This document shows positions 1,470-60,884 of a DNA stretch of 64,000 nucleotides, in pieces. Positions within the stretch are counted from its first letter, which is position 1, and every line of letters begins with the position of its first letter. The position numbers were made by a program, and so were the translations under genes. This DNA is from Malacoraja senta (Eukaryota), in NCBI GenBank assembly GCA_038087875.1, contig CM075983.1, positions 13,392,001 to 13,456,000 of the forward strand. The letters run 5' to 3'. Under the pieces are notes generated by a model that saw nothing but the letters and a program-made list of their open reading frames with translations, was not told the DNA's origin and did no database searches.

Positions 1470-3087
1470 CAGTGGCTTGCAAAAGTATTCATACCCCTTG
1501 AACTTTTCCACATTTTGTCACGTTACAACCACAAACGTAAATGTATTTTATTGGGATTTTATGTGATAGACCAACACAAAGTGGCGCATAATTGTGAAGT
1601 GGAAGGAAAATGATACATGGTTTTCACATTTTTTTACAAATAAAAAACTGAAAAGTGTCGCGTGCAAAAGTATTCAGCCCCCTTTACTCTGATACCCCTA
1701 AATAAAATCCAGTGCAACCAATTGCCTTCAGAAGTCACCTAATTAGTAAATAGAGTCCACTTGTGTGTAATCTAATCTCAGTATAAATACAGCTGTTCTG
1801 TGAAGACCTCAGAGGTTTGTTAGAGAACATTAGTGAACAAACAGCATCATGAAGCCCAGGGAACACACCAGACAGGTCAGGGATAAAGTCGTGGAGAAGT
1901 TTAAAGCGGGGTTAGGTTATAAAAAAAAATTCCCAAGCTTTGAACATCTCACGGAGCACTGTTCAATCCATCATCCGAAAATGGAAAGAGTATGGCACAA
2001 CTGCAAACCTACCAAGACATGGCCGTCCACCTAAACTGACAGGCCGGGCAAGGAGAGCATTGATCAGAGAAGCAGCCAAGAGGCCCATGGTAACTCTGGA
2101 GGAGCTGCAGAGATCCACAGCTCAGGTGGAAGAATCTGCCCACAGGACAACTATTAGTCGTGCACTCCACAAATCGGGCCTTTATGGAAGAGTGGCAAGA
2201 AGAAAGCCATTGTTGAAAAAAAGCCATAAGAAGTCCCGTTTGCAGTTTGCCGCAAGCCATGTGGGGGACACAGCAAACATGTGGAGGAAGGTGCTCTGGT
2301 CAGATGAGACCAAAATTGACGTTTTTGGCCTAAATGCAAAATGATATGCGTGGCGGAAACCTAACACTGCACATCACCCTGAACACACCATCCCCACTGT
2401 GAAACATGGTGGTGGCAGCATCATGCTGTGGGAATGCTTTTCTTCAGCAGGGACAGGGAAGCTGGTCAGAGTTGATGGGAAGATGGATGGAGCCAAATAC
2501 AGGGCAATCTTGGAAGAAAACCTGTTAGAGTCTGCAAAAGGCTTGAGATTGGGGCGGTGGTTCACCTTCCAGCAGGACAACGACCCTAAACATACAGCCA
2601 GAGCTACAATGGAATGGTTTAGATCAAAGCATATTCATGTGTTAGAATGGCCCAGTCAAAGTCCAGACCTAAATCCAATTGAGAATCTCTGGCAAGACTT
2701 GAAAATTGCTGTTCACAGATGCTCTCCATCCAATCTGACTGAGCTTGAGCTATTTTGCAAAGAAGAATGGGCAAAAATTTCAGTCTCTAGATGTGCAAAG
2801 CTGGTAGAGACATACCCCAAAAGACTTGCAGCTGTAATTGCAGTGAAAGGTGGTTCTACAAAGTATTGACTCAGGGGGGCTGAATACTTTTGCACGCGAC
2901 ACTTTTCAGTTTTTTATTTGTAAAAAAATTTGAAAACCATGTATCATTTTCCTTCCACTTCACAATTATGCATCACTTTGTGTTGGTCTATTACATAAAA
3001 TCCCAATAAAATACATTTACGTTTGTGGTTGTAACGTGACAAAATGTGGAAAATTTCAAGGGGTATGAATACTTTTGCAAGCCACTG
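1470..3087 (+). mobile_element. Full-length Tc1 DNA transposon (DD34E, IR/DR type), 1618 bp, transposase disrupted
   Basis: TA TSDs at 1468-1469 and 3088-3089. TIRs of ~214 bp (1470..~1683, ~2873..3087), each carrying GCAAAAGTATTCA twice. Transposase 1849..2869 has SDETK, QDND and NPIE (34 aa D-E spacing), a +1 frameshift in the A-run at 1921..1929 and an in-frame TGA at 2342..2344. Confidence 0.96.
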
Positions 3088-21500: not shown

Positions 21501-24500
21501 CTGTGGAATTCTCTGCCTCAGATGGAGGCCGGTTCTCTGGATACTTTAAGAGAGAGCTAGATAGGGCTCTTAAAGATAGCGGAGTCAGGGGATATGGGGA
21601 GAAGGCAGGAACGGGGTACTGATTGGGGATGATCAGTCATGATCACATTGAATGGCGGTGCTGGCTCGAAGGGCCGAATGGCCTATCCTGCACCTATTGT
21701 GTATTATATTGGATTGTATCACATGTTTCCTAACCAACAATTGCCTTACCAGGGAACCCCCCTGCCTGAGGTCATCTGTTTCCGGCCCTGATTTGTCCTA
21801 GTCTTTTCTCGTCTCTCCAGTTCTTTCATAGGCTCCTTTCATGCAAAGAAATTGAACCAAATTTGGCGGGAACAAAATCACACATGGGAATAAATTTGAG
21901 CAATATGAAATAATCTGTAGCTTTTCTTCCATTATTTTGCAAAACAGAGATTATATGTAGAAGTATGAGAGAAATGTAATCTATTCTGCATTTTCCTTGA
22001 TCTGCATTACCTTTGATGTCCCGTTTTCACACCTTACACTTCCTTATCTTTGTGTCTCCCTCACCCCAGACTCTCAGTCTGAAGAAGGGCCTCGAACCAA
22101 AAAGTCACCCATTCCTTCAATCCAGAGCAGAGGTGCTGCCTGTCCCGCTGAGTTACTCCCGCATTTTGTGTCTATCTTCAGAGATTTTAATAAAGTCATT
22201 TAATTTTTTTAATTGCAGTTCCACCCTCCAAGCCAAACTGTGGCATTGTCGCACACCCGGTGAAGGCCAGGTCAGCAATCCTTACCTGCCATTGCGATAA
22301 AGGCGTCCCAAGTCCCAGGTATCGCTGGGTGAAATTGGTAGACCAGGTTCATCAAAACATTTCTGGTCATCTTGGTAAGAAAGAAAAGAGACAAAAGTCA
22401 AGACTGTTTTATTCTCCTATGTTCTAGACAGAACAATTCAATTATTACTTACAGCAGCATAATAGAACATGTAAACATAGTACACTGTAAACAATACTCT
22501 ATTCCATGGAGCGCAGGGGGGTGACGGGTGATCTTATAAAGGTGTACAAAATCATGAGAGGAATAGATCGGGTAGAGGCACAGATTCTCTTGCCCAGAGT
22601 TGGGGAATCGAGGACCAAAGGCATAGGTTCAAGGTGAAGAGGAAAAAATTTAATAGGAATCTGAGGGGTAACTTTTTCACACAAAGGGTGGTGGGTGTAT
22701 GGAACAAGCTGCCAGAGGAGGTAGTTGAGGCTGGGACTATCCCATCATTTAAGAAACAGTTAGACAGGTACATGGATAGGACAGGTTTGGTGGGATATGG
22801 ACCAAGCGCAGGCAGGTGGGACTACTGTAGCTGGGACATTGTTGGCCGGTGCCTGTTTCCACACTGTATCACTCTATGGCTCTAATATAATAAACAAAAA
22901 AACATTCAATGGAAAAAGTATGTATATANNNNNNNNNNNNNNNNNNNNNNNNNNNNNNNNNNNNNNNNNNNNNNNNNNNNNNNNNNNNNNNNNNNNNNNN
23001 NNNNNNNNNNNNNNNNNNNNNNNNNNNNNNNNNNNNNNNNNNNNNNNNNNNNNNNNNNNNNNNNNNNNNNNNNNNACGCATGCACATACACGNNNNNNNN
23101 NNNNNNNNNNNNNNNNNNNNNNNNNNNNNNNNNNNNNNNNNNNNNNNNNNNNNNNNNNNNNNNNNNNNNNNNNNNNNNNNNNNNNNNNNNNNNNNNNNNN
23201 NNNNNNNNNNNNNNNNNNNNNNNNNNNNNNNNNNNNNNNNNNNNNNNNNNNNNNNNNNNNNNNNNNNNNNNNNNNNNNNNNNNNNNNNNNNNNNNNNNNN
23301 NNNNNNNNNNNNNNNNNNNNNNNNNNNNNNNNNNNNNNNNNNNNNNNNNNNNNNNNNNNNNNNNNNNNNNNNNNNNNNNNNNNNNNNATAATAATGCAAA
23401 AGGATAAAACCAATGCCAATATGTAGTTCATAGCTGATTTGGAGGTTGTAATGTTTAATAGCCCAACAGAAAGCAAATTCTTATCTCTAAGTTGCATCTT
23501 ATACCTTTCAACTTTTCCCATCTATTCTTTGTCTCATGATTCTTCCTAACCAGCGAGTGAACAGTTTCTACTGTAGGAATCTATTTTGTTTAATATTTCA
23601 GATCCAAGGACTGGAATGTTGACCATTTCAAATATTTCTGATAATGAAAATGGTATTTACCAGTGCATCGCATTCAATATACTGGGAGATGAAACATGCA
23701 CTGTCGACTTGACAAAACTTTGTAAGTATCCCTTGATAGCTTGTTAAGTTTGGGATAAAGAAAAACAAAAAATGCTGGAAACACTCAATAATCAGGCAGC
23801 ATCTGTGTAAAGAGAAACAAAGATAGTCCGAAGGTCTCCAATTAGGTAGATATTGGCTCAGGACTGCTCACTAGTTGTTGGTAGGATGGTTCAGTTGCCT
23901 GAAAACAGCTAGGAAGAAACTGTCCCTGAATCTGGAGGTGTGTGTTTTCACACTTCTATACCTCTTGCCCGATGGACGAGGGGAGTAGAGGAAGTGGCCA
24001 GTGTGCGACTTGACCTTGATTATGCTGTTGGCCTTGCCAAGGCAGTGTGAGGTGTAGATGGAGTCAATGGAAAGGAGGTTGGTTTGTATGATGGTCTGGG
24101 CTACGTCCACAATTCTCTGCTATTTCCTGAGAGCTCAACTGCTGGGCATCCTTACGATGCAAATCACTTTGTAGGATTGTAGACAGAATGAAGACAGAGC
24201 TAGAACTGCTGAGAGTTTATGAGCTGGGGAGTGTATAGTGAAGAGAGTAAGAACGTTAAATGGAAGAGAGTATAATGCTGGTCAGAAGTGACTTTAACAA
24301 CTTCGGGATGGGAGTATTGGAGCCAGGAGAGTGAATGTTCAAAAGCTTATGGGAAACCCTTGCCTTATTCAAAATCTAAATGTCATGTTACACTTTCCTT
24401 GAACATTGATCAAATATAAAATTCCAATATAAAAATTCAACATGTTCAGAGTGACCATAATTTTACTTGCCCAACTTTAAACCTACAACATCTGGATTTT

Positions 24501-27500
24501 CTCTTTCAGGCTTTCATGCACTAACCTTTATCCTCTAGTGCATTTGAAGAAAGGTTCATAAGTTATAGGAGTATAATTAGGCCATTTGACCCATCAACTC
24601 TACTCCGCCATTCAATCATGGCTGATTTATCTTTCCCTTTCAACCCCATTCTCTTGCTTTCTCACCATAACCCCCGACACCCGTATTAATCAAGATTGGT
24701 ATACCCCGCAGTATACACATGATACAAATCTCATGTTATATTTCTTCTCATAAGATTGTAATTTTCTATATTTTATAAAACTGTTTATTGTTTGCATTAG
24801 TATTTTGCATAGATGGTACTAGTGTTAACTACTAATTCACTAAATAAACACAGTTTTATGCTTCACATTGTGGATAAGCTTATTTTGGGATAAAATCAAA
24901 TTTGAGGTATTTTGGGATAAAATCAACTAGTACAACTAGTTCACCACCAGCTCGGTGACTCCAGCAACGGCCTACAATAATGGAATAAGAATAAAAGAAC
25001 AGTGCACATCTATGTTTTAGAAAGGAACTGCAGATGCTGGTATATACCAAAGATAGACATAAATTGCTGGAGTAACTCAGTGGGTCAGGCAGCATCTCTG
25101 GATGGGTGATATTACGGGTAAGGACCCTTTTTCAGATTCTGAGTCTGAAGAAAGGTCCCGTCCTGAAACATCACCCATTCTTTCTCTTCAGAGATGCTAT
25201 CTGACCCGGTGAGTTACTCCAGCACTTTGTGCCGATCTTGTGCATATCTACTGTTATTTTAATGGAATTACTCTGCCTGATAGTAGCGTTTAGATATTTT
25301 GAATTTGAACTGGTGGGTTTGAGCTGAAATTACATAATATGGTTATGCTGGAGTTTTGTAAATTTACAATTTGTGTCTTACTTTCTTGTTCGCTGAATCT
25401 GTGAAATTGAACTCCCAATATTGCAGTGGAATCCCAGAAAACATCATGTTAAGGGTGACATGTTTTTAGAACAGTTGTATCTCTAAAAAATAAATCTCTA
25501 AAAAAGGGAGGCATGGTGGCTCAGTGGTAGAGTTGCTGCCTTACAGCGCCAGAGACATGGGTTCAATCCTGACTACTGGTGCTGTCTGTATGGAGTTTGT
25601 ACATTCTCCCCGTGACCTGCGAGGGTTTTCTCAAGAGTGCTCCGCTTTCCTCCCACACTCAGAAGACGTGCAGGTTTGTAGGCTAACTGGCTTGGTAAAA
25701 TTATGAATTGTCTCTAGTGTGTGTAGGATAGTGTTCGTGCGTGTGGATCGCTGGTCGGCACGGACTTGGTGGACCGAAGGGCCTGTTTCCACTCTATCTC
25801 GAAACTAAACTTAAAAAACTTACATTAAGCAATTCCTTCTATCAAAAGATACGTTGAATGAATCAAACAGTTAACTCATTGATCTTTCCTTTCTGCTTCA
25901 GCTTCTGAGAGTGATGCCATCATCGGAGGTATTATTGGGGCGGTTCTGATAGCATCGATCATTGGAGTTATCATCTGGATGGTTACAAAGAAAGCAAAGA
26001 AAAATGCAAAGAAAAATGCGCAAAAAGATACTGAACTTCAGTGAGTGTGACGTTTTCCGTGTTGTTCCAAATGCTTTATATTTAGTCCTTGAGAAAATGC
26101 TTGGGTTTTGTCTATGTTATGTTGTCTGTTTTTATCAGCACAAGGGAAAAGAATCATGAGTTGGCATTTTCCATGAAATGCCTGGTCTAACCATCACCTG
26201 AGCTTTTGATTTTCTGGCAATAACCCTACAAATAATCACCATCTGTCGTCAATTAGTTGATCTTACCCTGGCAACTGCTAGGTGCAAAAAACTGCCTTAA
26301 GTTGCAATAATGGGCGAGGGAAACTATTAAGAGCACTGAATGCAGTCAAAGGCATGGGAGCAGATAACATCCCAGCCACAGTACTGAATACTTGCTCTCC
26401 AAAATCGGCTGTGCCTCCAACCAAGTTGTTCTACTAAAGGTACATCACTGACATCTACTTGTGTAGGAAGGAATTGCAGATGTGTTAAAGAAGGAACTGC
26501 AGATGCTGGAAAATCGAAGGTACACAAAAATGCTGGAGAAACTCAGTGGGTGCAGCAGCATCTATGGAGCGAAGGAAACAGGCAACGTTTCGGGCCGAAA
26601 CCCTGCTCCATAGATGCTGCTGCACCCGCTGAGTTTCTCCAGCATTTTTGTGTACCTAAGGAATTGCAGATGCTTGTTTAAACCAAAGATGACACAAATA
26701 GCTGGAGTAACTCAGCGGGACAGCATCTCTGGAGAGAAGGAGACATCTGGGAGACATTGACTTGACAATATGGGAAATTGCCCAGATATTAGTTTAGTTC
26801 AGAGATCCAGCGCGGAAACAGGCCCTTCGATCCATCAAGTCCATGCCGACCAATGATCCCTGCACATTAGTACTATCCTACATTAGGGCAATTTTTACAT
26901 TTATGCCAAGCCAATTTACCTACAAACCTTTGAGAAGGAACTGCAGATGCTGGAACATCGAAGGTAGACATAAATGCTGGAGAAACTCAGCGGGTGAGGC
27001 AGCATCTATGGAGCAAAGGAAATAGGCAACGTTTCGGGCCGAAACCCTTCTTCAGACATATCTGTTGGTCTTTGGAGTGTGGGAGGAAACCAAAGTTCTC
27101 AGAAAAAACCCACGCAGGTCACGGGGAGAAGTACAAACCCCATACAGACAAGCACCCGTAGTCAGGATCAAACTCGGGTATCTGGCGCTGTGAGTACTGT
27201 AAGGCAGAAATTCTACCGCTGCGCACCATGCTTCCCAATATGTCCTACAAATGGCAGAACAATCCCAACTACTGTCTGAATGTTGTGTAGGATCAGGGGG
27301 TATGCACGTAGATGTGAACAGCTTCATTTTCTGAGGAGTTGAACAATATTCAATCATCAGTAAAAGTCTCCACTTCTAAACTTATGATGGAAGGAAACCA
27401 CTGTTTGAGGCTGAGCCATATTGCTTGCATCTTTCATGTCACATTTAGTGAATATCGCCACTAATCCTTATTTCTCTTCTTCCAAGGGCCAAACAAGAAT

Positions 27501-27724
27501 CCAAGAACACTCTTGCCACCTACGTGGCTGTCCCCACTGATGCTGCAGCTGCGGAAAGTACAAACCATGTTGAGTCACCAGATGTGGGCCAAAACAGCAC
27601 GGACACCCCTGAGCTCCACCAACCTCCGCACGAACATCTGCCCTTGAGTGAACATGCTGATCCATCGGGCAGCGGGCAAGCAGAACGCAAGGAGAGTGAG
27701 GGAGATGGTCCACAGGAGACTTAG
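3492..27724 (+). CDS. VSIG1: V-set and immunoglobulin domain-containing protein 1 (CTX/A33 family), 7 coding exons, 1065 nt = 354 aa + stop
   Basis: join(3492..3540,7376..7539,16843..17041,22219..22374,23602..23721,25902..26040,27487..27724). All introns are GT-AG and the frame stays open. Order is signal peptide, split V domain (TLLC..QWSF / GNASITI..DSGNYIC..NPPDF), split C2 domain (PSKP.C / YQC), TM and acidic tail. Motifs match human VSIG1 as recalled (VQVT, GNASITI, DSGxYIC, NPPDF, KPSKP). Confidence 0.93.
5200..5890 (-). mobile_element. Degenerate Penelope-like fragment
   Basis: Purine-rich + strand with blocks similar to 55160..55870 (e.g. GGGTGGAAGGTGAG(A/G)AC). Confidence 0.5.
5915..6180 (-). 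mobile_element. CR1/HER1-like LINE 3' end
   Basis: Reverse complement of the 3' tail seen at 42000..42220. Confidence 0.7.
6395..7040 (-). mobile_element. CR1/HER1-like LINE, RT N-terminal fragment
   Basis: KSPGPDRIYPR, FKKGSRENPGNYRPV, SQHGF, CLTSLIEFF. Confidence 0.85.
7376..7539 (+). CDS. VSIG1: VSIG1 exon 2 (V domain N-half), 164 nt
   Basis: Acceptor cctcag| and donor CAG|GTAAAT. Encodes CVRAVQVTVKDGQLNGTEGGSVTLLCTYTT...NVQWSF. Confidence 0.95.
8880..9200 (+). mobile_element. CR1 LINE 3' fragment
   Basis: Ends GGGCCAAATGGCCTAATTCTGTCCTAT and is homologous to 52780..53105. Confidence 0.75.
9672..9972 (-). mobile_element. HE1-like SINE
   Basis: tRNA-like head plus HER1-like tail, (TTTAG)n on the + strand. 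Confidence 0.85.
10117..10230 (-). tRNA. tRNA-Leu(CAA) with 30-nt intron (5' exon 10230..10193, intron 10192..10163, 3' exon 10162..10117)
   Basis: GTCAGGATGGCCGAGTGGTCTAAGGCGCCAGACTCAAG-[30 nt]-TTCTGGTCTCCAACTGGAGGCGTGGGTTCAAATCCCACTTCTGACA. Acceptor, anticodon and T stems and the A/B boxes are intact. A T4 terminator lies at 10109..10106. Confidence 0.95.
13259..13569 (+). mobile_element. HE1-like SINE
   Basis: GGGCGGCACAGCGGTAGAG..GGTTCGATCC..(CTAAA)n. Confidence 0.85.
13858..14073. mobile_element. MITE, 216 bp, 36-bp TIRs, flanked by TTAA
   Basis: TIR GGGCCTGTCCCACTTTCACGACCTAATTCAC(G/A)ACCT. TTAA at 13854..13857 and 14074..14077. Confidence 0.88.
14856..15297 (+). mobile_element. HE1-like SINE with internal 24-bp tandem expansion
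   Basis: The SINE body is interrupted by 7 copies of TGTACATTGCCCCTAGTGCGTAAA. Confidence 0.8.
15015..15182. repeat. 24-bp tandem repeat x7
   Basis: Units start at 15015, 15039, 15063, 15087, 15111, 15135 and 15159. Confidence 0.95.
15511..15809 (-). mobile_element. HE1-like SINE
   Basis: Same head and tail, reverse orientation. Confidence 0.85.
16337..16640 (-). mobile_element. CR1 LINE 3' fragment
   Basis: AGGCCATTCGGCCCATC tail motif. Similar fragments lie at ~24555..24700, ~30190..30410, ~34560..34840 and ~36620..37020. Confidence 0.7.
16843..17041 (+). CDS. VSIG1: VSIG1 exon 3 (V domain C-half), 199 nt
   Basis: Acceptor tttacag| and donor TAG|GTAGTG. Encodes IYFYGG...[28 protein letters not shown]...LTVL. 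Confidence 0.95.
18346..18500 (-). mobile_element. HE1-like SINE, 3' half
   Basis: (TTTAG)n-AGATACAGCGTGGAAACAGGCCC. Confidence 0.75.
20203..20558 (-). mobile_element. tRNA-derived CORE-type SINE with L2-like tail and (ATT)n end
   Basis: 5' A/B boxes (TGGCGCAATGG, GTTCGAATCC), core CCTTGGGCAAGACACTTCACC, and 3' GCGCCTTGGG..AAAGGCGCTATATAAAT followed by (ATT)n. Confidence 0.8.
20841..21705 (+). mobile_element. CR1 LINE 3' part (ORF2 C-terminus)
   Basis: ORF 21032..21622 has VRPHLEYCVQFWSP and RRMRGDLIETYKI. The 3' stem-loop is GGGCCGAATGGCC. Confidence 0.9.
22219..22374 (+). CDS. VSIG1: VSIG1 exon 4 (C2 domain N-half), 156 nt
   Basis: Acceptor aattgcag| and donor TTG|GTAAGA. Encodes (V)PPSKPNCGIVAHPVKARSAILTCHCDKGVPSPRYRWVKL. 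Not shown in this frame in the ORF track. Confidence 0.93.
22497..22885 (+). mobile_element. HER1-like CR1 LINE 3' fragment
   Basis: GNFFTQRVVGVWNKLPEEVV followed by the tail CTGTTTCCACACTGTATCACTCTATG. Confidence 0.85.
22929..23387. other. N runs (22929..23075, 23093..23387) within (TA)/(CA)-rich sequence
   Basis: 147 and 295 Ns flanked by TATGTATATA and ACGCATGCACATACACG. Probably masked or unresolved microsatellite. Confidence 0.8.
23602..23721 (+). CDS. VSIG1: VSIG1 exon 5 (C2 domain C-half), 120 nt
   Basis: Acceptor atttcag| and donor TTT|GTAAGT. Encodes (D)PRTGMLTISNISDNENGIYQCIAFNILGDETCTVDLTKL. Confidence 0.93.
25505..25810 (+). mobile_element. HE1-like SINE
   Basis: GGTGGCTCAGTGGTAGAG..GGTTCAATCC..tail. 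Confidence 0.85.
25902..26040 (+). CDS. VSIG1: VSIG1 exon 6 (transmembrane helix and basic juxtamembrane segment), 139 nt
   Basis: Acceptor cttcag| and donor CA|GTGAGT. Encodes AIIGGIIGAVLIASIIGVIIWMVTKKAKKNAKKNAQK. Confidence 0.92.
26791..27228 (-). mobile_element. HE1-like SINE with a Penelope-tail insertion (~26930..27058)
   Basis: The SINE halves flank AAGGAACTGCAGATGCTGG...CCCTTCTTCAGAC. Confidence 0.75.
27024..27058 (-). ncRNA. Minimal type I hammerhead ribozyme motif in a Penelope-derived tail
   Basis: UGU-CUGAAGA-A-GGG-UUUCGG-CCC-GAAAC-GUU|GCC. Catalytic core boxes and stem II are intact. Confidence 0.6.
27487..27724 (+). CDS. VSIG1: VSIG1 exon 7 (cytoplasmic tail to stop)
   Basis: Pyrimidine-rich acceptor tttctcttcttccaag|. 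The phase-2 start matches exon 6, and the frame runs into ORF 27524..27724, ending at TAG. Confidence 0.85.
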
Positions 27725-30700
27725 TTAGCCAGCAGGGTCAGAATCAGAAGCTATCATTTTATACCAAAAAAAAGAGATTATGAAGGGTCTCTAAGTAAAA
27801 CATCAAAATAATTTATATTGCAAGCGCAATATTATGAGTGAATCTGTACACATAATAGAATTTCCTTTCATATGAATTGCTAATTGCATCCCAGCCATTC
27901 TCGCTATTATCATGGTTTAAAACTGCTTCAAGATATATTTTACTTGAGTGCAAAGCAATGAATAATTTGTTGTCTTAAATTTCCCACCTCATTGATGAAA
28001 ATACATAATTTTGGCACAGTAGACGATGGGCCGAATGGCCTAATTATGCTCCTAGAACTTATGAATCGTTTTGCATTTGACAAGTTTATTGGGTCAAGGA
28101 TGAGGATGCCTCGCTGGATCTTGGGATTCTTCAACTAAGGACGGGGAAAATAATCCTTCTTTCAGTCGCTACCCAGAGATCAGTCCTTGTACTGGAATCT
28201 TGAACAATAAACAAACTGTTGGAAGAACTCAATAGGTTAGGCAGCATCTGTAAAAGGAAATTCATCAGTTTGATGAAGGGTCAGGACACAAAACCTTATC
28301 TGTCCATTTCTTTCCACAAATGCTGCCTGAACTGCTAAGTTCCTCCAGCAGTTTGCTTGTTGATCAATTCTTTTACATTGAGAAATACAAGGAGCTGCAG
28401 ATGTTGGTTTACAATAAAATACAAAAAGTGCTGGAGTAACTCGCTGGGTCAGGCAACGTCTCCGGAGAACATGGATAGATGACATTTTGGGTCGGGTGTG
28501 AAGTAGATTTAAATATATCTGTAAGCAGCTTTACACATGATAACAAGTATGGTTTTGAGCCTAGACACATGCAATTGACATTTTAAATGAAGGCAATTTG
28601 ATTATTTGCACAGCTACATTGGTTGAGATTATGGACTAAATGCTGGGCGATGGGATTATAATGGAATCCCATTATAGCATGGATGTGTTGGGCTGAATGG
28701 ACTCTTGCCATGCTGTAGGATTTTATGATTCCATGATTCTATGAACAAGATCAGTGTTGGTCCTAAAGCCCTGAAGATCGGTAGGAAATTGACATTCACG
28801 AAGCCCTGAAGATCGGTAGGAAATTGACATTCACGAATACATAACAAAACACTGCTAATGTTGCAAAACTGAAATAAAAATGCTGGAAATGTTCAGTAGA
28901 TTTGTCTGCCTATGTGGAGAGAGAAACAGAGTTAACTATTGAAAGATTATCATCCTAAAATGTTAAATGTGTTTCTCTGTAGTTGCTGCTTCACCCATTG
29001 AGTATACCCAGCATTTTCTATTTTTAATTCAGATTTCCAACAGGTGCAGTATTTTGTTGTTGGATTAACATTTTAGATCAAAGGCCTTTCAACAAGATGA
29101 AAGTTCACTGAATGGTTAACTTTGTTTCTTTCCATAGATGATGCCTGGCATTCGGATTATTTGCAGCATGTTCTGCTTTTAAGCTGACATTTACCTACAC
29201 AAGATATATATAGAGGAAGGGTGGTCACTTTGGGGTAAAATTGTAGAACCGCCATCGATCACAGAACAGTTCCTCAGCAAATGTCTTGTGGAAATAGTTT
29301 TTAAAAATACAAACATCGTTTTTTTCCGGCATGAAGCTCCGTTGAGCTATTCATTCTTTATCAAGATCCTTATCTTCAGCGCAGACAAATAATTTACGTC
29401 TCATCGGTCTGGTTTGGACCCGAGTCCCAAGGATTCAATGGGAATGTCCTTAATGGTCATTATCGTGACTTTGTAAATGTCACTGTTTAACCAATGCGTG
29501 ATTGCTAAATAGTTTCTTTTGTTTTATGTTTGTATGAAGTAAATACCATTGAAAAATTGGTTGTTGAACAACCCGTGGTTTAGGGAGCAGACGTTATGTA
29601 GTTATGCACACTCACCCAGCCACGTTTTTTACATCATTATTAATTAATGGCAGCAATGAGCTGGAGTTTCAAGATATGTGCCCCGTGTCCCCATTGGAAA
29701 TACAGAAACTACCCACTATTCTCTTAACAGAAATCCTGCTTATATAACAGCAGGAAGTTGCTCCTAATATGGATTTAATTCACTTTTCAGATAACGAATC
29801 TCTTTTGAAAATAAATTAGAAGGAATGAGCAAAGTATGTAAAAAGGGAAAGATACAGAGATTGCTTTAGAATAGATCTTTAGAATTACCAAGTGTCAATG
29901 GCTCGATTGTAATCATATATGGTCTTTCTAATCTGGATAGCACACAACAAAAGCTTTTCACTGTACCTTAGGGTCTGGAATCAAAATTTGGAGGGTGGAG
30001 CTGAGAGCGATCCACATTTCATTTTTAACTGATTAGTTTTCAATTTACATTCATCTACCTGCAGCAAGTTCCAAGTGCCAGATTTAAAAGATATTTTAAC
30101 GTTTTGCAATTGCCTGCCGCTGCATGAATGTCTCATGTAGCTGACAGAAGCCACGTGTCCAGGCAGGTGTGGCACCTTAATGGGCATTAAGTTCATAAAT
30201 TATAGGAGCAGAATTAGGCCATTCGGCCCATCAGGACTATTCTGCCATTCAATCATGGCTGATCTATCTTTCCTTCTCAACCCCATTCTCCTGCTTTCTC
30301 CCCATAGTCCCTGACACACCTACTAATCAAGAATCTATCAAGCTTTGCCTTAAGACTATCCATTGATGTGGCCTGTATAGATTCTGTGACAATGAATTCC
30401 ACAGATTTGTCACAGATTATTTTGCAGGTCAGGTTCATTATGTCAGAGATACTTGAGCTGGAAACAGATGAACATTCTTCAAGATCAATGCAGAAATATC
30501 GGATTGCATTTCACATTTGCTTTCTTGATTAAGTTCTATTCCAAAGTGCACATAAACATTTTGTAATAAGTGATAGAAAATCTAAGCCTGAAAAAAATGG
30601 CTAAATGTACCTTCTAAATGTCTTCAATATTTTAAGTTTCACCATTTAATATTGCTGCAACTATTTGGTCTTCTCTTTTCTTTAAGAAGATTAATAATTT

Positions 30701-32067
30701 CTTTTTTGTACACGCTTATTTTTTCTACCCATCTCTTCTTATTTCTTTGCAATACAGTTAATTGGTGTAAAAGATAATGACACCTGAAATATTAGATGTT
30801 GACTGATGATTGTCAGAATTTCCAATTTCTAAATAAGCAGGTGGCTTTCTTAATATGTTTTCTAATGAATTGCCTTTGTATGGATTTGCCTGTCAAAAGT
30901 TAAGCATTTGTTTTAAAATCATGTATATTTGATTAAATCATTGCTTCTATTGCCACTAAGACTGTAAAGAGTTAATCAACTGTGTATTTTTACAATTCTG
31001 TAAAAAAAAAGTCTGAAGTCAATAATGTCTGCACAAAAATAGGATTGCATTAATATAAACTACTTCTTAAATAAAACTTTTGGTGTCATTCTACTTTCAT
31101 CTCTAACATGAGGGCAAATCAATACCAGAATTTATGCTGGCCAATAACTAGCACCGTCTTCTATGAGGATGATGCGATGCAATGATGGATTTTCTTTGGA
31201 ACGTAATGTTCCTTGGTTATTCTGGAGGAGAATATTATCTGTCGTTAAGCAGCAAGTCATAGCTGGGTAGTGAAATGTGCTTATGATGGATTGACTTGGG
31301 GGATAACCTTTGTGGATCAATGAGTAATAAAGTTTCACAAAGCCCTCTGAAATAATGTAACGTGCGTTAACATTGCCGAAACATACAAGTTCATAAGTTC
31401 TAGGTGCAGAATTAGGCCATTCGGCCCATAGAGTCTGGGGGAGGCTAAGGACGGAAAGGTCAGTATGGGAATGGGAAGGGGAGTTAGTGTTTGGCAACCG
31501 GGAGATCACTAGGCCAAAGCAGACCAAGCAAGGGTGTTCAGCGAAAAGATCTCCCAGTCAGCGCTTGGTGTCGCAGATATATAGGACTCCACACTATTAT
31601 ATTCCTCTTTCACATGGTAACACACAGTTCAATCATGTTGAGTTAATCTACAATTAAAACAGCCTGCAAAGCATCCAGTCTATTCAATCTTACAGAGCCC
31701 AACTCACCTACTGAAACACTACTATGAGATATGATTTATTATTTATTTATTTATCCTCCTTGTCTTAGTCTCCCTCTTCATTATTTTGCACGCAAGTTCT
31801 GATAACATTGTTGGTCTTGAAACCTCGGACAGTGAAACTCCAGAGGTTGACTCGTACAGCCGCTCGGCGCTGCAGCAGATCTTTTCATGTTGTTTTGCGA
31901 TGTCACGCGACGTGCATCACATCAATTGCGATGTCATGCACTGGTCATCCCATGCATTATGTTGTCATCTGATCCCACCTGAATCATGTTATGTCCAATG
32001 AAACCCATCTGTTAATATGTTACTGCAGCCCTTCACTCAAAGACTAATTTCATAAGAATGGAACAAT

Positions 32068-32889
32068 ATGAGAATCTTAACTAAATTATTCCTACACTCC
32101 AAGGCGTACTCAAATGCAATCAGCAGTCCAGGGAAATTCCAATGCTTGCAATACTTGAAGACACTGAGGAATTTTCAGAATGATGGATTTTACACGGTTT
32201 ACTTGGGTAAAACGCATATTTCTGAGAACCTGATAACAGGCGATGTGAACTCCAGCGTGGTCAAAACCAAATCACCTCTTGAAGAACTGACATTAATCCA
32301 CGCTGGGGGAGTAAGAGGCTGGGTCCCGTGGCAATACAGAGTCTTCTTCCAGTCACAGCAACTATGGACGTCTCCAAAGCCTGTAGATGCTAATGAGCGG
32401 ATCTTTGAAGAATTCTGTCAGGTGCTCAGGGAAACCTACGGAAAATGCACAGTGGTGATGAGATCCAAATATTGGGTTCCTGCAACTAAGTCACAGGTTC
32501 AAAGTTCCTCTGAAGACCAGTCAGTGATCCCTCTGTGGAACCCAGAGGCCAAGCTCAATTCCCCTTCGCAATCTCCAGACATCCAAATGACAAAGGTTTT
32601 TTGTCCCAGGATTGCGAGACACCATGGCCACGAGTTCTTGTACCTTCCTCCCCCTTATCCTCATCTCAGTCCTTTAGAATCAGCATGGTCTTCGGTTAAA
32701 TGGGCTTTAATCAACAATAGGAAACATTTCACTGTTGCGGCCTTTCCAAAAATAGATGACTACAAGCGCATCCACTTGAAGGCTTTGATTGAAAACGCGA
32801 TTGAGGGAGTAACGCCTTCCAAATGGGAAACGTCCTTTAACCGAGTCAAGAAGTGGGAGAATCGCTATCTCTACAACCAAGCGCAGTAA
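32068..32889 (+). CDS. FAM243A: FAM243/C21orf140 homologue, single-exon, 273 aa, IS630/Tc1-like DDE-derived
   Basis: Intact ORF in unique sequence. The motifs QCLQYLKTLR, GFxTVY.G.T.I.E.L.TG, HAxG..GWVPW.YRVF, F.EFC.V.R..YGKC, GHE.L.LP.P...L.PL.SAWSS.KW..INNR.F and V..WEN.YL match human C21orf140 as recalled, with QC at the same position 25-26. AATAAA lies at 32914..32919. Confidence 0.87.
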   Translation: MRILTKLFLHSKAYSNAISSPGKFQCLQYLKTLRNFQNDGFYTVYLGKTHISENLITGDVNSSVVKTKSPLEELTLIHAGGVRGWVPWQYRVFFQSQQLWTSPKPVDANERIFEEFCQVLRETYGKCTVVMRSKYWVPATKSQVQSSSEDQSVIPLWNPEAKLNSPSQSPDIQMTKVFCPRIARHHGHEFLYLPPPYPHLSPLESAWSSVKWALINNRKHFTVAAFPKIDDYKRIHLKALIENAIEGVTPSKWETSFNRVKKWENRYLYNQAQ

Positions 32890-33454
32890 GGGGCCTCTCC
32901 TCTGATAATTGCAAATAAAATATCAATGCCACATTTTTGAGGTATCATTTTTAAACTTCAGAAAAGATTTTAGGAAAGGCAATTTTCGATGTTTCCAATT
33001 CAGAGGTGTTATTGCAAGGTGATCTTATTTAGGGGATGGAATCCATGTCATGATTCTAGTTTGGAAGTTTGCTATGGGAACGGAGCTGAGATCTATGGGA
33101 TTGGAGTTCCAGAGTCCCGGCTGCAGGGAGCAAATTCAACATGCTGATCGGCGTGGAAAACCCCATCAGATTAGGTTTGGCTGCCTCACCTAACCTAGGC
33201 ACCACATTTTCGGGGGGAGACTACGGTGAGGGGTATTTTAAATATGCTCTCAGTATAAAGCAGGTGCCGCACCATTGGTTGTCAGAATATTGGTGGTGAA
33301 CCTGTATTTAACTGAAGGATTTACTTTTTGTTGAAAGCACACAACATCTTTATAACTTATTAATTTACTACTTTTTTCTTAATCCTAGCCATTCTCTATT
33401 TGGTTCTCAAAATACCTTCAATCCTTCTTTAAAACCTAACATTACTTTCAATGC

Positions 33455-33790
33455 TTGACCACACAACTGTTTGAGCTGCTACCTCACAGCACCAGAGGCT
33501 CAAGTTCGACCCTCACCTTGGGTGCTGTCTGTGTGGAGTTTGCACGTTCTTCTGTGATCGCGTGGGCTTCCTTTGGTAGCTGCGGTTTCCTCCCGTATGC
33601 CAAAGACCTGTATGTCTTTAGGTTAATTGGCCTCTGTAAAAATCGCCTCTAATGTACAGGAGGTGGAAGCGAACGTGGGATAACATAGAACTAGTGTCAA
33701 CGGGTGATCAATGTTCGGAGTGGACTCAGCGGGCAGAAGGGCCTGTTTCCATGCTGTATCTCTAACATTAAAATTAAAACTAAAACTAAA
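33455..33790 (+). mobile_element. HE1-like SINE (diverged)
   Basis: Body GGTGCTGTCTGTGTGGAGTTTGCAC and tail GAAGGGCCTGTTTCC. Confidence 0.75.
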
Positions 33791-35179
33791 TTGGCACACA
33801 ATGTTTATCTTGGATCATGTCTAAATTTCCAACATTTTTTTTTCAGTCACCATCCCCTTCTTTTCTACTTTCATCCAGTCTGCAAATTTGAGACAATATG
33901 CAATCTCTGGATTAAATAGTAACAGACTCAAGGCTCACATCATAGTGTCTTGTTTACAATCTAAACTGACGTCTTTTGTTATTCCTTCAGACTAAAAATG
34001 TAACCAAATTTCTTGAATTGAGTTTTCAGTGCTGGAGACATATGAAGGTTAGAAAGAGATTTTTTAAATGCTTTGTTGTGATCCATAATATAGACGATAT
34101 ATCTGTTTCTCCCAATGAGTAGGTACTTGTTTCTTGATCAGAAAATGTTCACTTTGGAACAACAATAGCAGTTTGATCAATTATTGAATTCACAGTTAAA
34201 AAATTGAATTCCAAAGTGAAAATTAGTTTCATTACCACTTATTCCACAGATGTGATGGTATAGGTCATACTGTCCTCCCTACGTGATTGTTTAACAGTAG
34301 AACGTAGATTGACAGCCAGCCAAACTCGATTCAATAATCAGACGCGAGTCTGGAAGTTAGCATCTCTGCTCTTAAGTTTAATGATTTTCCAGTGCTGTCA
34401 TTCTTAATATTGAAAAACGACTGAAACTAAATAAAGGAGAAGAAAGATACATAAATTACTCTCCTTTGCAGAAATATACATTTAAATAGAAATTAAACAT
34501 ATAGGGCGAATATATAATAATATACAATCCTATTAACAATCAAAGCACTTAAGAGTTCATAAGTAGAATTGGGTCATTCAGCTCAAAGTCTACTCCGCCA
34601 TTCAATCATGGTCTACCTATCTTTCCTTCTCAACCCCATTCTCTTACCTGCTCCCCATAACCTTTGACACCCTTTCCAATCAATAACTTGTCAATCTCCG
34701 CTTTAAAAGTTCCCATTGACTTAGCCCACAGCCTTCTGTGGCAATGAATTCCACAGATTCACCTACCTCTGACTAAAGAAATTCCTCCTTATCTCCTTTC
34801 TAAAGGTACGTCCATTTATTCGGAGGCTGTGCCCTCTGGTTGGTGTCTGGAGTGGGATACTATTACTATTCACATGCTATTTTAATCTTATGTGTCTCAA
34901 AAATATGGGGGACACATGTTGAATATGCTATTATCTTTCTTGCAAACAATTTAAGACTACCAAAATTAATCATTTAAATGTTTATTCACTTCTATCACTG
35001 TTTCATTGCTTCTTGGTTAAATCCTGATGCGCACTTTGCCACCTTTTCAATGGTAATTCTAGACCAAAAAAACAGAAGTTAAATTGTCGCCCAGACACTT
35101 CTCCCTCCTCAGAGACACTGATGATCTGAACAGAAAAGGCATCAACATTAAGAATATAACTATCAATATCAATGTCGTA

Positions 35180-46554: not shown

Positions 46555-47510
46555 CAAATCAATTCAATTCAATCTTTAATTGTCATTGTGCAGTGTACAG
46601 TACAGAGACAACGAAATGCAGTTAGCATCTCACCCAGAAAAGCGAACTTAGGAATAATGAGCAGTAAAATATATATATGTACAGTAGTGCAATTTTTCTG
46701 GGGGAAATAGTGTCCGGGGGAGGGGTGACTGGCAATCACCGAGGTGCAGATTTCAGTAGTGTAACAACCGCAGGGAAGCAGCTGTTCCTGAACCTGCTGG
46801 TTCAGCAACGGAGAGACCTGTAGCGCCTCCCGGATGGGAGGAGGGTAAACAGTCTGTGGTTGGGGTGAGAGCAGTCCTTGACGATGCTGCGCGTCCTTCG
46901 CAGACATCGCTTGCTTTGGACAGACTCAATGAAGGGGAGTGAGGAACCGGTGATGCGTTGGGCGGTTTTCATCACCCTCTGCAGTGCTTTCCGGTCAGAG
47001 ACAGAGCAGTTGCCATACCATACTGTGATACAGTTGGTAAGGATGCTCTCGATGGTGCAGCGGTAGAAGTTCACCAGAATCTGAGGAGACAGATGGACCT
47101 TCTTTAGTCTCCCCAGGAAGAAGAGAAGCTGGTGAGCCTTCTTGACCAGTGTTGATGTATTGTGGGTCCAAGAGAGGTCATCAGAGATGTTGACCCCCAG
47201 AAACCTGAAGCTGGAAACACGTTCCACCTCCGTCCCGTTAATATGGATGGGAGTGTGCGTGCAGCCCCTAGACCTCCTGTAGTCCACAATGAGCTCCTTG
47301 GTCATCTTGGAGTTAAGGGCCAGGTTGTTGTCAGTGCACCATGCTGCTAGGAGCTGAACCTCCTCCCTATAGGCCAACTCATCGTTGTCGCTGATGAGGC
47401 CAATCACCGTTGTATCATCTGCATACTTGATGATGGTGTTAGAACCATGTACAGGTGTGCAGTCGGTGAAGGTGAAGAGGGAGTAGAGGAGGGGGCTCAG
47501 TACACAGGCC
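46555..47510 (-). mobile_element. Rex1/Babar-like LINE, RT C-half, young
   Basis: The 242-aa ORF has LSPLLYSLFT, IIKYADDTTVIGLI, FRFLGV, ESILTNCITVWY and LPSGRRYRS. The tail is (GAATT)n. Confidence 0.88.
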
Positions 47511-60710: not shown

Positions 60711-60884
60711 AATAGCAATACTACTACGCCACCAACTGCAAATTGACCCTTGTCTGTGTAGAACTTTACCTGGTAGTACTCTTTCCTACTAGACCTATGT
60801 TGTGGAACCATACATGCATGGTTCCATCTCACCAATAGCACCATATTCCATCTGCTTTTCGGGAGAACAAGAAATGCAGACCAG

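What the first reader, a model, noticed from the sequence alone, without database searches (positions are those of the whole stretch)
32068..32889. FAM243/C21orf140 looks like an ancient domesticated, catalytically dead IS630/Tc1/mariner DDE domain
Seen: an intact single-exon 273-aa ORF with a polyA signal 25 nt after the stop and no TIRs or TSD. Its motifs fall in the order expected for an ITm (DDE_3) catalytic domain. VYLGKT sits where transposases have (VY/W)xDET, with G47 in place of the first Asp. LIHAGGVRGWVP resembles the IxHAGxxxGFV strand. TVVMRSKY sits at the V(I/M)DNAxYH site, with R132 in place of the second Asp. GHEFLYLPPPYPHLSPLESAWSSVK (E204) parallels [22 protein letters not shown] of the real Tc1 at 2399..2869 in this window. 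No HTH DNA-binding region precedes it. Knowledge, from memory: human C21orf140 is uncharacterised and also lacks the Asp residues (YFGET, VIVVKE, NPLDSAW). Inference: an RNase H-fold pseudo-enzyme was co-opted before the cartilaginous/bony fish split and kept under selection. Candidate roles are nucleic-acid binding, scaffolding or dominant-negative transposon control.
Basis: partly seen in the sequence, partly recalled or inferred. Interest (0 to 1): 0.8.

Follow-up and report, generated by a model that had tools for sequence, protein, structure and literature searches.

The report
Skate FAM243: dead Sailor-type transposase gene
This intact 273-codon gene is the skate copy of FAM243/C21orf140, a jawed-vertebrate host gene made from the cutting half of an ancient Sailor-type Tc1/mariner-like transposase that lost its DNA-binding half and two of its three catalytic residues yet has stayed under selection.

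Summary

- **The gene.** Window 32068-32889(+) is an intact single-exon ORF of 273 aa. AATAAA starts 25 nt after the stop. There are no TIRs or TSD.
- **Orthology.** It is the orthologue of C21orf140/FAM243 (Pfam PF27940), which is found from sharks to mammals.
- **Homology to transposases.** A profile of the orthologues hits genuine DDE_3 transposases over the whole protein (E down to 3e-15 among 1.84 billion proteins). hhalign between the FAM243-only and transposase-only profiles gives 99.7% probability, E 8e-27.
- **Structure.** The AlphaFold2 model (pLDDT 79) matches only Tc1/mariner catalytic domains at the top (SETMAR, Mos1, Sleeping Beauty; Z 12.9-13.9).
- **Source lineage.** The nearest transposases are not canonical Tc1. 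They carry the DD81-83E/DD90E spacing of the Sailor (DD82E) superfamily, which is reported absent from vertebrates.
- **Catalytic triad.** It reads G47/R132/E204 here, and none of 30 orthologues keeps all three residues.
- **Selection and copy number.** dN/dS among batoids is 0.22-0.43. The genome holds two copies only, inside a ~58.5 kb tandem duplication, against at least 9,497 candidate Tc1-like DDE_3 sites.

A DDE fold for human C21ORF140 was already listed in passing in Nat Commun 2024. The dead triad, the Sailor origin and the gnathostome-wide age appear to be new. Function remains inferred.

The parts
32068..32889 (+). FAM243/C21orf140 orthologue: single-exon CDS of 273 aa plus stop. 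It corresponds to the catalytic (RNase H-like DDE) half of a Sailor-like ITm transposase.
   Evidence: ORF. Orthologues at 87-95% identity named C21orf140 homolog and carrying PF27940. Profile hits to DDE_3 transposases. hhalign 99.7%. Structural matches.
32206..32208 (+). Codon GGT = G47, at the position of the first catalytic Asp (the D of the transposase 'DE' motif). The next codon is K48 here and E in most orthologues.
   Evidence: Codon read. Column mapping. G in 29 of 30 orthologues; D only in coelacanth.
32461..32463 (+). Codon AGA = R132, at the position of the second catalytic Asp (transposase motif V-M-D-N-A-x-Y-H).
   Evidence: Orthologues carry R/K/S/T/N here; D only in clupeiform fishes and one catfish, which then lack the third residue.
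32677..32679 (+). Codon GAA = E204, the retained third acidic residue (transposase motif L-N-P-I-E).
   Evidence: E in cartilaginous fishes; D in sturgeon, coelacanth and tetrapods; N/Y in teleosts.
32473..32598 (+). Residues 136-177: a poorly conserved Ser/Pro/Gln-rich spacer between positions D2 and E3. It is the remnant of the long Sailor-type insert.
   Evidence: pLDDT below 50. Highest regional dN/dS, 0.37-0.60. D2-E3 spacing is 71 here against 81-83 or 90 in the nearest transposases and 34 in Tc1.
32599..32886 (+). Residues 178-273: beta5 plus the C-terminal helical subdomain, the most constrained part of the protein.
   Evidence: Regional dN/dS 0.11-0.17. pLDDT mostly above 90. The sub-threshold Pfam DDE_3 hit lies here, at residues 185-221.
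32914..32919 (+). AATAAA polyadenylation signal.
   Evidence: Conserved within TGCAAATAAAAT in Rhinoraja and Pristis; AACAAA in Narcine.
31625..32067 (+). Upstream block of ~440 nt conserved among batoids and contiguous with the CDS. It is inferred to be promoter plus 5'UTR.
   Evidence: A single blastn block, window 31625 to ~33005, aligns with Rhinoraja (92.5%), Pristis (78.5%) and Narcine (72.6%). Conservation drops outside it.

Best explanation
**What it is.** The ORF is the skate orthologue of FAM243/C21orf140. This is an intronless host gene found across jawed vertebrates. It descends from the C-terminal catalytic (RNase H-like DDE) half of a Sailor-like (DD82E) IS630/Tc1/mariner transposase.

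**What it lost (shown).**
- The N-terminal helix-turn-helix DNA-binding half.
- The terminal inverted repeats and the target-site duplication.
- Two of the three metal-binding carboxylates: first Asp to G47 and second Asp to R132. Only E204 is kept.

It therefore cannot perform two-metal-ion DNA cleavage or strand transfer.

**What it kept (shown).** The fold and an intact ORF, under purifying selection since before the split of cartilaginous and bony fishes. Selection is strongest on the C-terminal third.

**How it works (inferred, not shown).** It acts as a non-catalytic binding module. It is a basic protein (pI 9.5 here, 8.3-9.6 in all 30 orthologues) that keeps the transposase's substrate cleft. 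An Arg or Lys sits where a metal-binding Asp used to be in most orthologues. I propose it binds nucleic acid or a protein partner without cutting. Its parent transposon family is gone from the genome, so the selected function must be a host function and not repression of that transposon.
For: **Identity.** 12 and then 21 orthologues named C21orf140/FAM243 and carrying PF27940. Taxa range from sharks to rodents, deer and birds. The model matches the AFDB models of mouse, cow and human C21orf140 at TM 0.72-0.79, E ~1e-24.

**Transposase origin.**
- An exhaustive profile search gives 135 hits. After the orthologues come proteins of 430-570 aa matched over query residues 25-272, with E 3.4e-15, 3.4e-13, 1.2e-8 and so on.
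- Most of the ten sampled hits pass the Pfam DDE_3 threshold.
- hhalign of the FAM243-only profile against the transposase-only profile: 99.7%, E 8e-27, 219 columns.
- Reciprocally, the transposase-only profile searched against the whole 1.94 Gb genome finds the two FAM243 loci first (E 3.1e-20). The next hit is at E 2.3e-5.

**Fold.** AF2 pLDDT 79, pTM 0.76. The top 18 Foldseek PDB hits are all SETMAR, Mos1 or Sleeping Beauty catalytic domains. VIA-align Z is 12.9-13.9 over 179-202 residues, then drops to 9.7 or less for retroviral integrases.

**Sailor affinity.**
- 27 of the 34 nearest transposase domains show a complete D..D..E triad, and 32 of 34 have a D2-E3 spacing of 81-85 (the other two 78 and 90).
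- The tree places FAM243 (support 100) as sister (93) to two DD90E transposases, inside the DD82E group and away from skate Tc1.
- The Sailor paper lists a Nomia melanderi DD82E element of 455 aa, which fits hit P0032/P0160.

**Dead triad.**

**Not a transposon.** Two copies only, both inside one tandem duplication. No TIRs. The locus is collinear in three other batoids.

**Selection.** Pairwise NG86 dN/dS is 0.22-0.43, with bootstrap upper bounds of 0.77 or less. The C-terminal third is at 0.11-0.17.

**Basic charge.**
Against: - **Expression in this species is not shown.** No RNA run was listed, and the four runs laid were whole-genome DNA.
- **The AF2 model may be steered.** It reached confidence only after transposase domains were added to the alignment; with 13 orthologues alone pLDDT was 38. 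The fold match is therefore not fully independent of the sequence homology.
- **The Sailor label is indirect.** It rests on spacing, nearest neighbours and one species match in a supplementary table, not on a joint tree with the published Sailor set. The quick tree does not exclude FAM243 being sister to all sampled DD82E sequences instead of nested among them.
- **The Tc1 comparison profile was shallow.** It had 5 rows, which exaggerates the contrast.
- **The spacing differs.** FAM243's own D2-E3 spacing (53-73) lies outside the published Sailor range (78-111).
- **The binding function is pure inference.** No ligand, partner or localisation was tested.
Confidence: 0.8

Rival explanations
1. 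FAM243 is still an active nuclease of the DDE superfamily, as implied by its listing among 'putative nuclease candidates'. It would use E204, E48 of the GET motif and other residues in a non-canonical active site.
For: Nat Commun 2024 lists C21ORF140 as a DDE endonuclease candidate. One acidic triad residue is kept in cartilaginous fishes and tetrapods, and the Glu next to the lost first Asp is kept in most orthologues. The fold is intact.
Against: No orthologue keeps all three triad residues. The first position is Gly in 29 of 30. The second is usually Arg or Lys, which would repel a metal ion. Teleosts lose the third residue as well (N/Y). This window's own protein also has K48 instead of E48. 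The pattern of which residues survive differs between lineages, which is not what a conserved active site looks like.
Confidence: 0.06
2. The gene derives from a canonical Tc1 (DD34E) or mariner transposase like the one at 2399..2869, and the long spacer is a later host-specific insertion. The resemblance to DD82E elements would then be coincidental.
For: Foldseek and VIA-align top hits are mariner and Tc1 structures, but no Sailor structure exists in the PDB to compete. The C-terminal motif aligns with skate Tc1.
Against: All 34 best-scoring transposase domains are long-spacer DD8xE/DD90E-type; none has the 34-residue spacing. hhalign gives 99.7% against DD82E and 4.4% against skate Tc1. The DD82E profile picks FAM243 out of a genome holding at least 9,497 candidate Tc1-like sites. 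FAM243 shares the motif F-E-x-x-C-x-x-x-x-x-x-Y-G-K-C with the sister transposases P0025 and P0031.
Confidence: 0.07
3. It is kept as a truncated, DNA-binding-less dominant-negative repressor of its parent transposon family.
For: Truncated transposases can poison transposition.
Against: No other Sailor-like sequence exists in this genome, and the family is reported absent from vertebrates. There is nothing left to repress. Yet the gene stays under purifying selection in lineages about 450 My apart.
Confidence: 0.04
4. It is a decaying transposon relic or a chance ORF, not a functional gene.
For: No RNA evidence was obtainable here. Pfam DDE_3 is below threshold.
Against: The ORF is intact in at least 30 species from sharks to mammals. 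All dN/dS confidence intervals lie below 1. The flanks and the polyA signal are conserved. A duck muscle RNA-seq study reports FAM243A as differentially expressed.
Confidence: 0.02

Closest known systems
Sailor (DD82E) superfamily of IS630/Tc1/mariner DNA transposons (Shi et al. 2021, PMC8533490)
   Same: FAM243's closest sequence relatives carry Sailor's DD82E-type spacing. The homology covers the full catalytic domain, with shared motifs (Y-L-D/G-E-T, H-A-G-G-x-x-G-F/W-V-P, G-H-x-x-L-x-L-P-P, L-N/S-P-I/L-E-x-x-W). There is also a long spacer between the second and third catalytic positions.
   Different: FAM243 has no HTH half, no TIRs, no TATA TSD and only one or two copies. The triad is reduced to G/R/E and the spacer is shortened to 53-73 residues and disordered. 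Sailor elements themselves are reported absent from vertebrates.
SETMAR/Metnase transposase domain (Hsmar1-derived; PDB 3F2K, 3K9J)
   Same: It is the best structural match (Z 13.6-13.9). It is also a domesticated ITm catalytic domain with an altered triad (DDN, from established knowledge).
   Different: SETMAR is restricted to anthropoid primates, keeps its HTH DNA-binding domain and residual nuclease activity, and is fused to a SET domain (established knowledge). FAM243 is stand-alone, has no DNA-binding domain, is gnathostome-wide and lacks two triad residues. Sequence identity is about 11-13%.
pogo-derived host genes (CENPB, JRK/JRKL, POGK, POGZ, TIGD)
   Same: These are ancient vertebrate genes built on an ITm-superfamily DDE domain, often with a degenerate triad. 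They appear lower in the structural hit list.
   Different: They derive from pogo (DDE_1 type) and keep CENPB-type HTH DNA-binding domains. FAM243 derives from a DDE_3/Sailor-like lineage and has no DNA-binding domain.
Human C21ORF140/FAM243A as 'DDE endonuclease' candidate (Nat Commun 2024, PMC11377751)
   Same: It is the same protein family and the same fold assignment.
   Different: That paper only lists the protein as a putative nuclease. This analysis shows the triad is lost in every orthologue examined. It also identifies the Sailor-like source lineage, the loss of the DNA-binding half, the age and the selective constraint.
Canonical Tc1 (DD34E) element in the same window, 1470-3087
   Same: It belongs to the same superfamily and the same Pfam family (DDE_3), and it shares the C-terminal motif.
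   Different: It has perfect TIRs of at least 30 nt, a TA TSD, an empty site in the paralogous unit and thousands of relatives in the genome. Its spacing is 34 residues, and its profile similarity to FAM243 is weak.

Membership tests
FAM243 / C21orf140-like (Pfam PF27940) | Full-length sequence similarity to proteins named C21orf140/FAM243 | tested here: met
   E 1e-174 to 1e-45 at 94-100% coverage; all hits carry the precomputed PF27940. The local Pfam copy lacks PF27940, so the window protein itself could not be scored against that model.
FAM243 / C21orf140-like (Pfam PF27940) | Same fold as the mammalian members | tested here: met
   TM 0.72-0.79, E 1e-24, 36-39% identity to the AFDB models of mouse, cow and human C21orf140.
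FAM243 / C21orf140-like (Pfam PF27940) | Orthologous, vertically inherited locus | tested here: met
   The locus is collinear with three batoids. The upstream Ig-domain gene lies on the same strand in Rhinoraja. The family is monophyletic (support 100), and its tree broadly follows the split into chondrichthyans, actinopterygians and sarcopterygians. Synteny with bony vertebrates was not tested.
Active IS630/Tc1/mariner (DDE_3) transposase or transposon | RNase H-like catalytic fold with the ITm C-terminal helical part | tested here: met
   Z 12.9-13.9 to SETMAR, Mos1 and Sleeping Beauty over 179-202 residues; Foldseek probability 1.00.
Active IS630/Tc1/mariner (DDE_3) transposase or transposon | Complete D-D-E/D catalytic triad | tested here: not met
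   G47 / R132 / E204; no orthologue keeps all three.
Active IS630/Tc1/mariner (DDE_3) transposase or transposon | N-terminal paired-like HTH DNA-binding domain | tested here: not met
   Only 4 open codons lie upstream of the ATG. Positions 1-152 of the transposase profile find nothing at the locus. The relatives carry an extra N-terminal ~150-210 residues, some with weak HTH_33 or HTH_Tnp_Tc3_2 matches.
Active IS630/Tc1/mariner (DDE_3) transposase or transposon | Terminal inverted repeats and a TA/TATA target-site duplication | tested here: not met
   No TIR-like pair brackets the ORF. By contrast, the Tc1 at 1470-3087 has perfect TIRs and a TA TSD.
Active IS630/Tc1/mariner (DDE_3) transposase or transposon | Dispersed multicopy distribution | tested here: not met
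   Two copies 58.5 kb apart inside one tandem duplication, against at least 9,497 candidate DDE_3 sites.
Active IS630/Tc1/mariner (DDE_3) transposase or transposon | Pfam DDE_3 (PF13358) gathering threshold | tested here: not met
   24.5 bits against a cut-off of 28.6, E 2.6e-5, residues 185-221 only.
Sailor / DD82E superfamily (as descendant, not as element) | Nearest transposase relatives carry the DD78-111E signature | tested here: met
   32 of the 34 nearest hits show a D2-E3 spacing of 81-85, the other two 78 and 90. The Nomia melanderi DD82E entry in the paper's Table S6 fits hit P0032/P0160.
Sailor / DD82E superfamily (as descendant, not as element) | Own spacing between second and third catalytic positions within 78-111 | tested here: not met
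   71 here and 53-73 across FAM243. That is longer than any Tc1/mariner (34-41) but shorter than the published Sailor range.
Sailor / DD82E superfamily (as descendant, not as element) | Phylogenetic placement with Sailor to the exclusion of the other ITm superfamilies | tested here: inconclusive
   The quick ML tree places FAM243 sister (93) to two DD90E proteins within the DD82E group, apart from skate Tc1 and another skate DDE_3 type (81). Mariner, pogo, Gambol, Zator, TP36, IS630 and the published Sailor sequences were not included.
Domesticated transposase gene | Purifying selection on the coding sequence | tested here: met
   NG86 omega 0.22-0.43; bootstrap 95% upper bounds 0.34-0.77.
Domesticated transposase gene | Expression as a host mRNA | not testable with these tools
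   No RNA run was listed for this species. The runs laid were genomic DNA. The only indirect support is from birds.

The most novel reading that the evidence does not exclude
FAM243 is the only surviving vertebrate descendant of the Sailor (DD82E) transposon superfamily. That superfamily is reported absent from vertebrates and has no domesticated gene on record. A catalytic-domain-only fragment was captured in the stem of jawed vertebrates, more than ~450 My ago. It has since served as a metal-free RNase H-fold binding protein. Its FAM243-specific N-terminal ~20 residues form a basic stretch with no acidic residue in about the first 16 positions. That stretch resembles an organelle-targeting presequence or a nucleic-acid-binding helix, which would point to a cellular role unrelated to transposition.
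Probability: 0.55. Interest if true: 0.6.

Novelty: new member of a known kind. Interest (0 to 1): 0.5.

Why it matters
C21orf140/FAM243A is an uncharacterised human chromosome-21 gene conserved across jawed vertebrates.

- **Better hypothesis.** Knowing that it is a transposase catalytic domain with no DNA-binding half and a dead active site replaces the published 'putative nuclease' label. The sharper hypothesis is a non-catalytic RNase H-fold binder, and it tells experimenters which assays to run.
- **For transposon biology.** It would be the first host gene traced to the Sailor/DD82E lineage. It would also show that this lineage once lived in vertebrate ancestors, although no elements remain.
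- **Teaching contrast.** The window holds a domesticated relic without ends and a textbook Tc1 insertion with TIRs, a TSD and a preserved empty site, 30 kb apart.

Tried and rejected
- **phmmer against PDB sequences.** Only chance hits (E 0.8-1, an archaeal solute-binding protein). Single-sequence search is too weak here.
- **First AF2 run with 13 orthologues.** pLDDT 38, unusable. It was replaced by a 64-row alignment.
- **Word-indexed homologue searches.** They returned only 12 and 21 proteins, so mammals are represented mainly through the exhaustive search and the cluster look-ups.
- **Synteny test through KCNE genes.** The PF02060 search in the own genome failed because the machine was busy. 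I did not repeat it, so orthology with bony vertebrates rests on sequence and tree.
- **Expression.** Two run searches listed no RNA run (one search failed). The four runs laid were whole-genome DNA, with even 4-30x depth and huge depth on repeats. They give no transcript evidence. They only show that related species carry the locus.
- **DNA for three shark and ray orthologues.** It could not be fetched because the files were too large, so dN/dS uses four batoids only.
- **TIR search on the metagenomic contigs of the sister transposases (L029, L030).** No convincing TIRs. The contigs may be truncated, so their mobility is not shown.
- **hhalign against skate Tc1.** It used only 5 near-identical rows and should be read as a weak negative.
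- **Complex prediction.** No homodimer or partner prediction was run, because the report makes no binding claim that such a job could test.
Full report
**1. The observation**

Window 32068..32889(+) is an intact ATG-initiated ORF of 273 aa. The frame is open for only four more codons upstream (277 aa). The TAA stop is at 32887-32889, and AATAAA lies at 32914-32919, starting 25 nt after it.

A repeat search over 30000-35000 finds no inverted pair that brackets the ORF like TIRs. The pairs it finds are short arms at 72-94% complementarity scattered at chance level.

**2. Identity**

A word-indexed search returns 12 proteins. All are named 'C21orf140 homolog' or 'FAM243-like', and all carry the new Pfam family PF27940 ('C21orf140-like'). 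They include:
- Rhinoraja at 87% identity.
- Pristis at 74%.
- Sharks at 64-69%.
- Sturgeon at 39%.

Further searches and cluster look-ups add coelacanth, skinks, parrots, quail, owls, rodents, deer, eels, clupeiforms and catfishes. No jawless vertebrate or invertebrate orthologue appeared.

The gene is a single 822-nt exon in Rhinoraja, Pristis and Narcine as well.

**3. Homology with transposases (sequence)**

On its own the protein gives only a sub-threshold Pfam DDE_3 hit: 24.5 bits against a cut-off of 28.6, E 2.6e-5, residues 185-221.

A profile of 13 orthologues was searched exhaustively against 1.84 billion representative proteins and gave 135 hits at E of 1e-3 or better. After the FAM243 orthologues come proteins of about 430-570 aa. 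Their C-terminal ~250 residues align with query residues ~25-272 (P0025 E 3.4e-15, P0027 3.4e-13, P0032 1.2e-8, and so on). Most of the ten sampled pass the Pfam DDE_3 threshold. Their N-terminal ~150-210 residues give weak HTH_33, HTH_Tnp_Tc3_2 or HTH_32 matches.

To avoid any circularity I built two separate profiles:
- FAM243-only (30 rows, A6) against transposase-only (26 rows, A7): hhalign gives 99.7% probability, E 8e-27, over 219 columns.
- The reciprocal test is striking. The transposase-only profile was searched in six frames over the whole 1.94 Gb assembly. It finds the two FAM243 loci first (E 3.1e-20, model positions 153-402 of 434). Everything else is at E 2.3e-5 or weaker and covers only ~70 residues of the C-terminal motif of Tc1 copies.

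**4. Homology (structure)**

With the shallow 13-row alignment AlphaFold2 failed (pLDDT 38). With a 64-row alignment (30 orthologues plus 34 transposase domains) it gave pLDDT 79 and pTM 0.76, with the core above 90 and residues 136-177 disordered.

- Foldseek against the PDB: the top 18 chains are all Tc1/mariner catalytic domains (SETMAR/Metnase 3K9J, 3F2K, 3K9K; Mos1 4U7B, 3HOT, 3HOS, 5HOO, 4MDA/B, 2F7T; Sleeping Beauty 5CR4). E runs from 2e-5 to 2e-3 and probability is 1.00. Retroviral integrases follow.
- VIA-align: Z 12.9-13.9 over 179-202 residues for all eleven ITm entries, then a clear drop to 9.7 or less.
- Swiss-Prot AFDB models: mouse, cow and human C21orf140 come first (TM 0.72-0.79), then SETMAR, Tc3, Tc1, Mos1, and then the pogo-derived POGK, JRK and CENPB.

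Caveat: the transposase rows in the alignment may have steered the model, so I weight the sequence statistics more heavily.

**5. Which transposase lineage**

In the 64-row alignment, 27 of the 34 nearest transposase domains show D(E)...D...E, the first two Asp are about 89 residues apart in most, and 32 of 34 have 81-85 residues between the second Asp and the Glu (the other two 78 and 90).

That is the signature of the Sailor (DD82E; range DD78-111E) superfamily. Sailor is described as common in invertebrates, present in bacteria, and 'absent in vertebrates', with TATA TSDs. The paper's Table S6 lists a Nomia melanderi DD82E element with a 455-aa ORF. My hit P0032/P0160 is a 444/449-aa Nomia melanderi protein. 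Other named hits come from a mirid bug and a beetle.

Against the skate's own canonical Tc1 (DD34E, five intact copies fetched), hhalign gives only 4.4% probability over 60 columns. That profile is shallow, so this is a weak negative.

A quick ML tree (70 rows, LG+C20) shows:
- FAM243 monophyletic (SH-aLRT 100) on a long stem.
- Sister (93) to the two DD90E proteins P0025 and P0031, with which it shares the motif F-E-x-x-C-...-Y-G-K-C just before the second catalytic position.
- Inside the DD82E group and apart from skate Tc1.

The tree does not exclude FAM243 being sister to all sampled DD82E sequences. The published Sailor set and the other ITm superfamilies were not included, so I treat the Sailor origin as likely (about 0.75), not proven. 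FAM243's own spacing (71 here, 53-73 in the family) is far longer than in any Tc1/mariner but shorter than the published Sailor range. The spacer is disordered and evolves fastest.

**6. Catalytic residues**

| Position | Window protein | Across 30 orthologues |
|---|---|---|
| First Asp | G47 | Gly in 29; Asp only in coelacanth |
| Second Asp | R132 | R/K/S/T/N; Asp only in clupeiforms and one catfish |
| Third residue | E204 | Glu in cartilaginous fishes; Asp in sturgeon, coelacanth and tetrapods; Asn/Tyr in teleosts |

No orthologue keeps all three. The lineages that keep the second Asp have lost the first and third residues. That is the pattern of a relaxed former active site, not a remodelled one. 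The window's own protein additionally has K48 where the others have the Glu of the 'DE' motif. The published listing of C21ORF140 among 'putative nuclease candidates' is therefore unlikely to be correct as regards activity.

**7. Not a transposon, and under selection**

- **Copy number.** The genome has exactly two matches. Their proteins are identical and they lie 58,547 bp apart on the same contig. The 3.8 kb around them is 99.4% identical.
- **Tandem duplication.** Window 1-5484 recurs at 60041-64000 (up to 99.75% identity), so both copies sit in one tandem ~58.5 kb duplication. Whether this is a young duplication or two haplotypes assembled in tandem is open.
- **Contrast with Tc1.** DDE_3 has at least 9,497 candidate sites in the genome.
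- **Collinear locus.** The locus is collinear with Rhinoraja and Pristis over more than 15 kb. One block, 31625 to ~33005, is conserved in all three batoids (92.5%, 78.5%, 72.6%). It includes ~440 nt upstream of the ATG and the polyA signal.
- **Selection.** Pairwise Nei-Gojobori dN/dS among four batoids is 0.22-0.43 (dS 0.14-0.74). Bootstrap 95% upper bounds are 0.34-0.77. Residues 178-273 are at 0.11-0.17 and the spacer at 0.37-0.60.

**8. Mechanism**

*Shown:* an RNase H-like ITm catalytic fold; no DNA-binding half; no ends; two of three carboxylates gone; purifying selection; no parent elements left in the genome.

*Inferred:* the protein is a non-catalytic binding module. All 30 orthologues are basic (pI 8.3-9.6, net charge +3 to +16), and a positive side chain usually occupies the second metal-ligand position. 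This fits direct, metal-free contact with phosphate, but it equally fits a protein scaffold.

Expression could not be tested. No RNA run was listed, and the runs that hold the locus are genomic DNA. The only expression evidence I found is in duck muscle.

**9. Novelty**

- The fold assignment for the human protein is already in print as a table entry.
- Automatic annotation hints at it too: UniRef calls a sturgeon fragment a 'DDE-1 domain-containing protein', NCBI calls a beetle Sailor-like fragment a 'C21orf140 homolog', and PF27940 also hits the 570-aa transposase P0025.
- I found nothing in the searchable literature (15 papers mention the gene; 8 of the listed papers mention DD82E) on the dead triad, the loss of the DNA-binding half, the Sailor-like source, the gnathostome-wide age or the selective constraint.

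I class it as a new member of a known kind, namely domesticated ITm transposase genes. Interest is moderate.

Noticed in passing
window 1470-3087 (empty site at about window 61603): A textbook Tc1 (DD34E) insertion of 1,618 bp. It has perfect TIRs of at least 30 nt (CAGTGGCTTGCAAAAGTATTCATACCCC...) and a TA target-site duplication. The uninterrupted empty site (ATTATATA|GTGTAAG) is preserved in the second unit of the tandem duplication. Its transposase frame is broken into ORFs at 1849-2034, 1940-2344 and 2399-2869. The insertion is younger than the duplication, or it is a haplotype polymorphism.
   Followed up: yes
window 1-5484 versus 60041-64000; second FAM243 copy at G000:C7:13482615-13483433, outside the window: A tandem duplication of ~58.5 kb, 99.4-99.75% identical, carries both FAM243 copies. 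Rhinoraja shows a single place. This could be a very young segmental duplication or two haplotypes assembled in tandem.
   Followed up: partly
window ~16500-28600 (+): Exons of an immunoglobulin-superfamily gene lie upstream of FAM243 on the same strand, with a V-set match in the ORF at 16507-17172. Its Rhinoraja counterpart is a 354-aa V-set/Ig_3/I-set protein that ends ~4.3 kb before FAM243. An earlier first-stage note calls the neighbouring gene VSIG1.
   Followed up: partly
window 32068-32139 (residues 1-24): The FAM243-specific N-terminus has no aligned counterpart in the transposases. In all full-length orthologues it is basic (3-7 Lys/Arg), and most have no acidic residue in about the first 16 positions. 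It looks like a presequence or a basic helix. No targeting predictor was available.
   Followed up: partly
window 46802-47530 (-) and 55149-55787 (-): Retroelement fragments: an ORF with RVT_1 plus an ALKBH8_N-like match (LINE-type), and an ORF with a GIY-YIG match (Penelope-like).
   Followed up: no
window 31346-31539, 33480-33867, 30182-30375, 34644-34837: Very high-copy short repeats flank the unique FAM243 block. Word depth is 10^4-10^6 in all four genomic runs, and contigs break there. A pair of ~137-nt direct copies lies at 30237-30373 and 34590-34726. They are dispersed repeats, not ends of a FAM243 element.
   Followed up: partly
proteins P0027 (Nesidiocoris tenuis, 451 aa), P0037, P0047, P0103: Some full-length insect or metagenomic Sailor-like proteins also have Gly at the first catalytic position, and S/Q at the second (G-E...S...E in P0027). 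This is the same first-position change as in FAM243. They may be decaying copies or independent domestications.
   Followed up: no
loci L009, L011, L014-L017 (own genome): The best-scoring DDE_3 matches in the skate genome are not the common 339-aa Tc1. They belong to a second ITm type (343-aa frame, motif IYIDEAGFN ... YLPPYSPFLNPIE) that branches apart from Tc1 in the tree.
   Followed up: no
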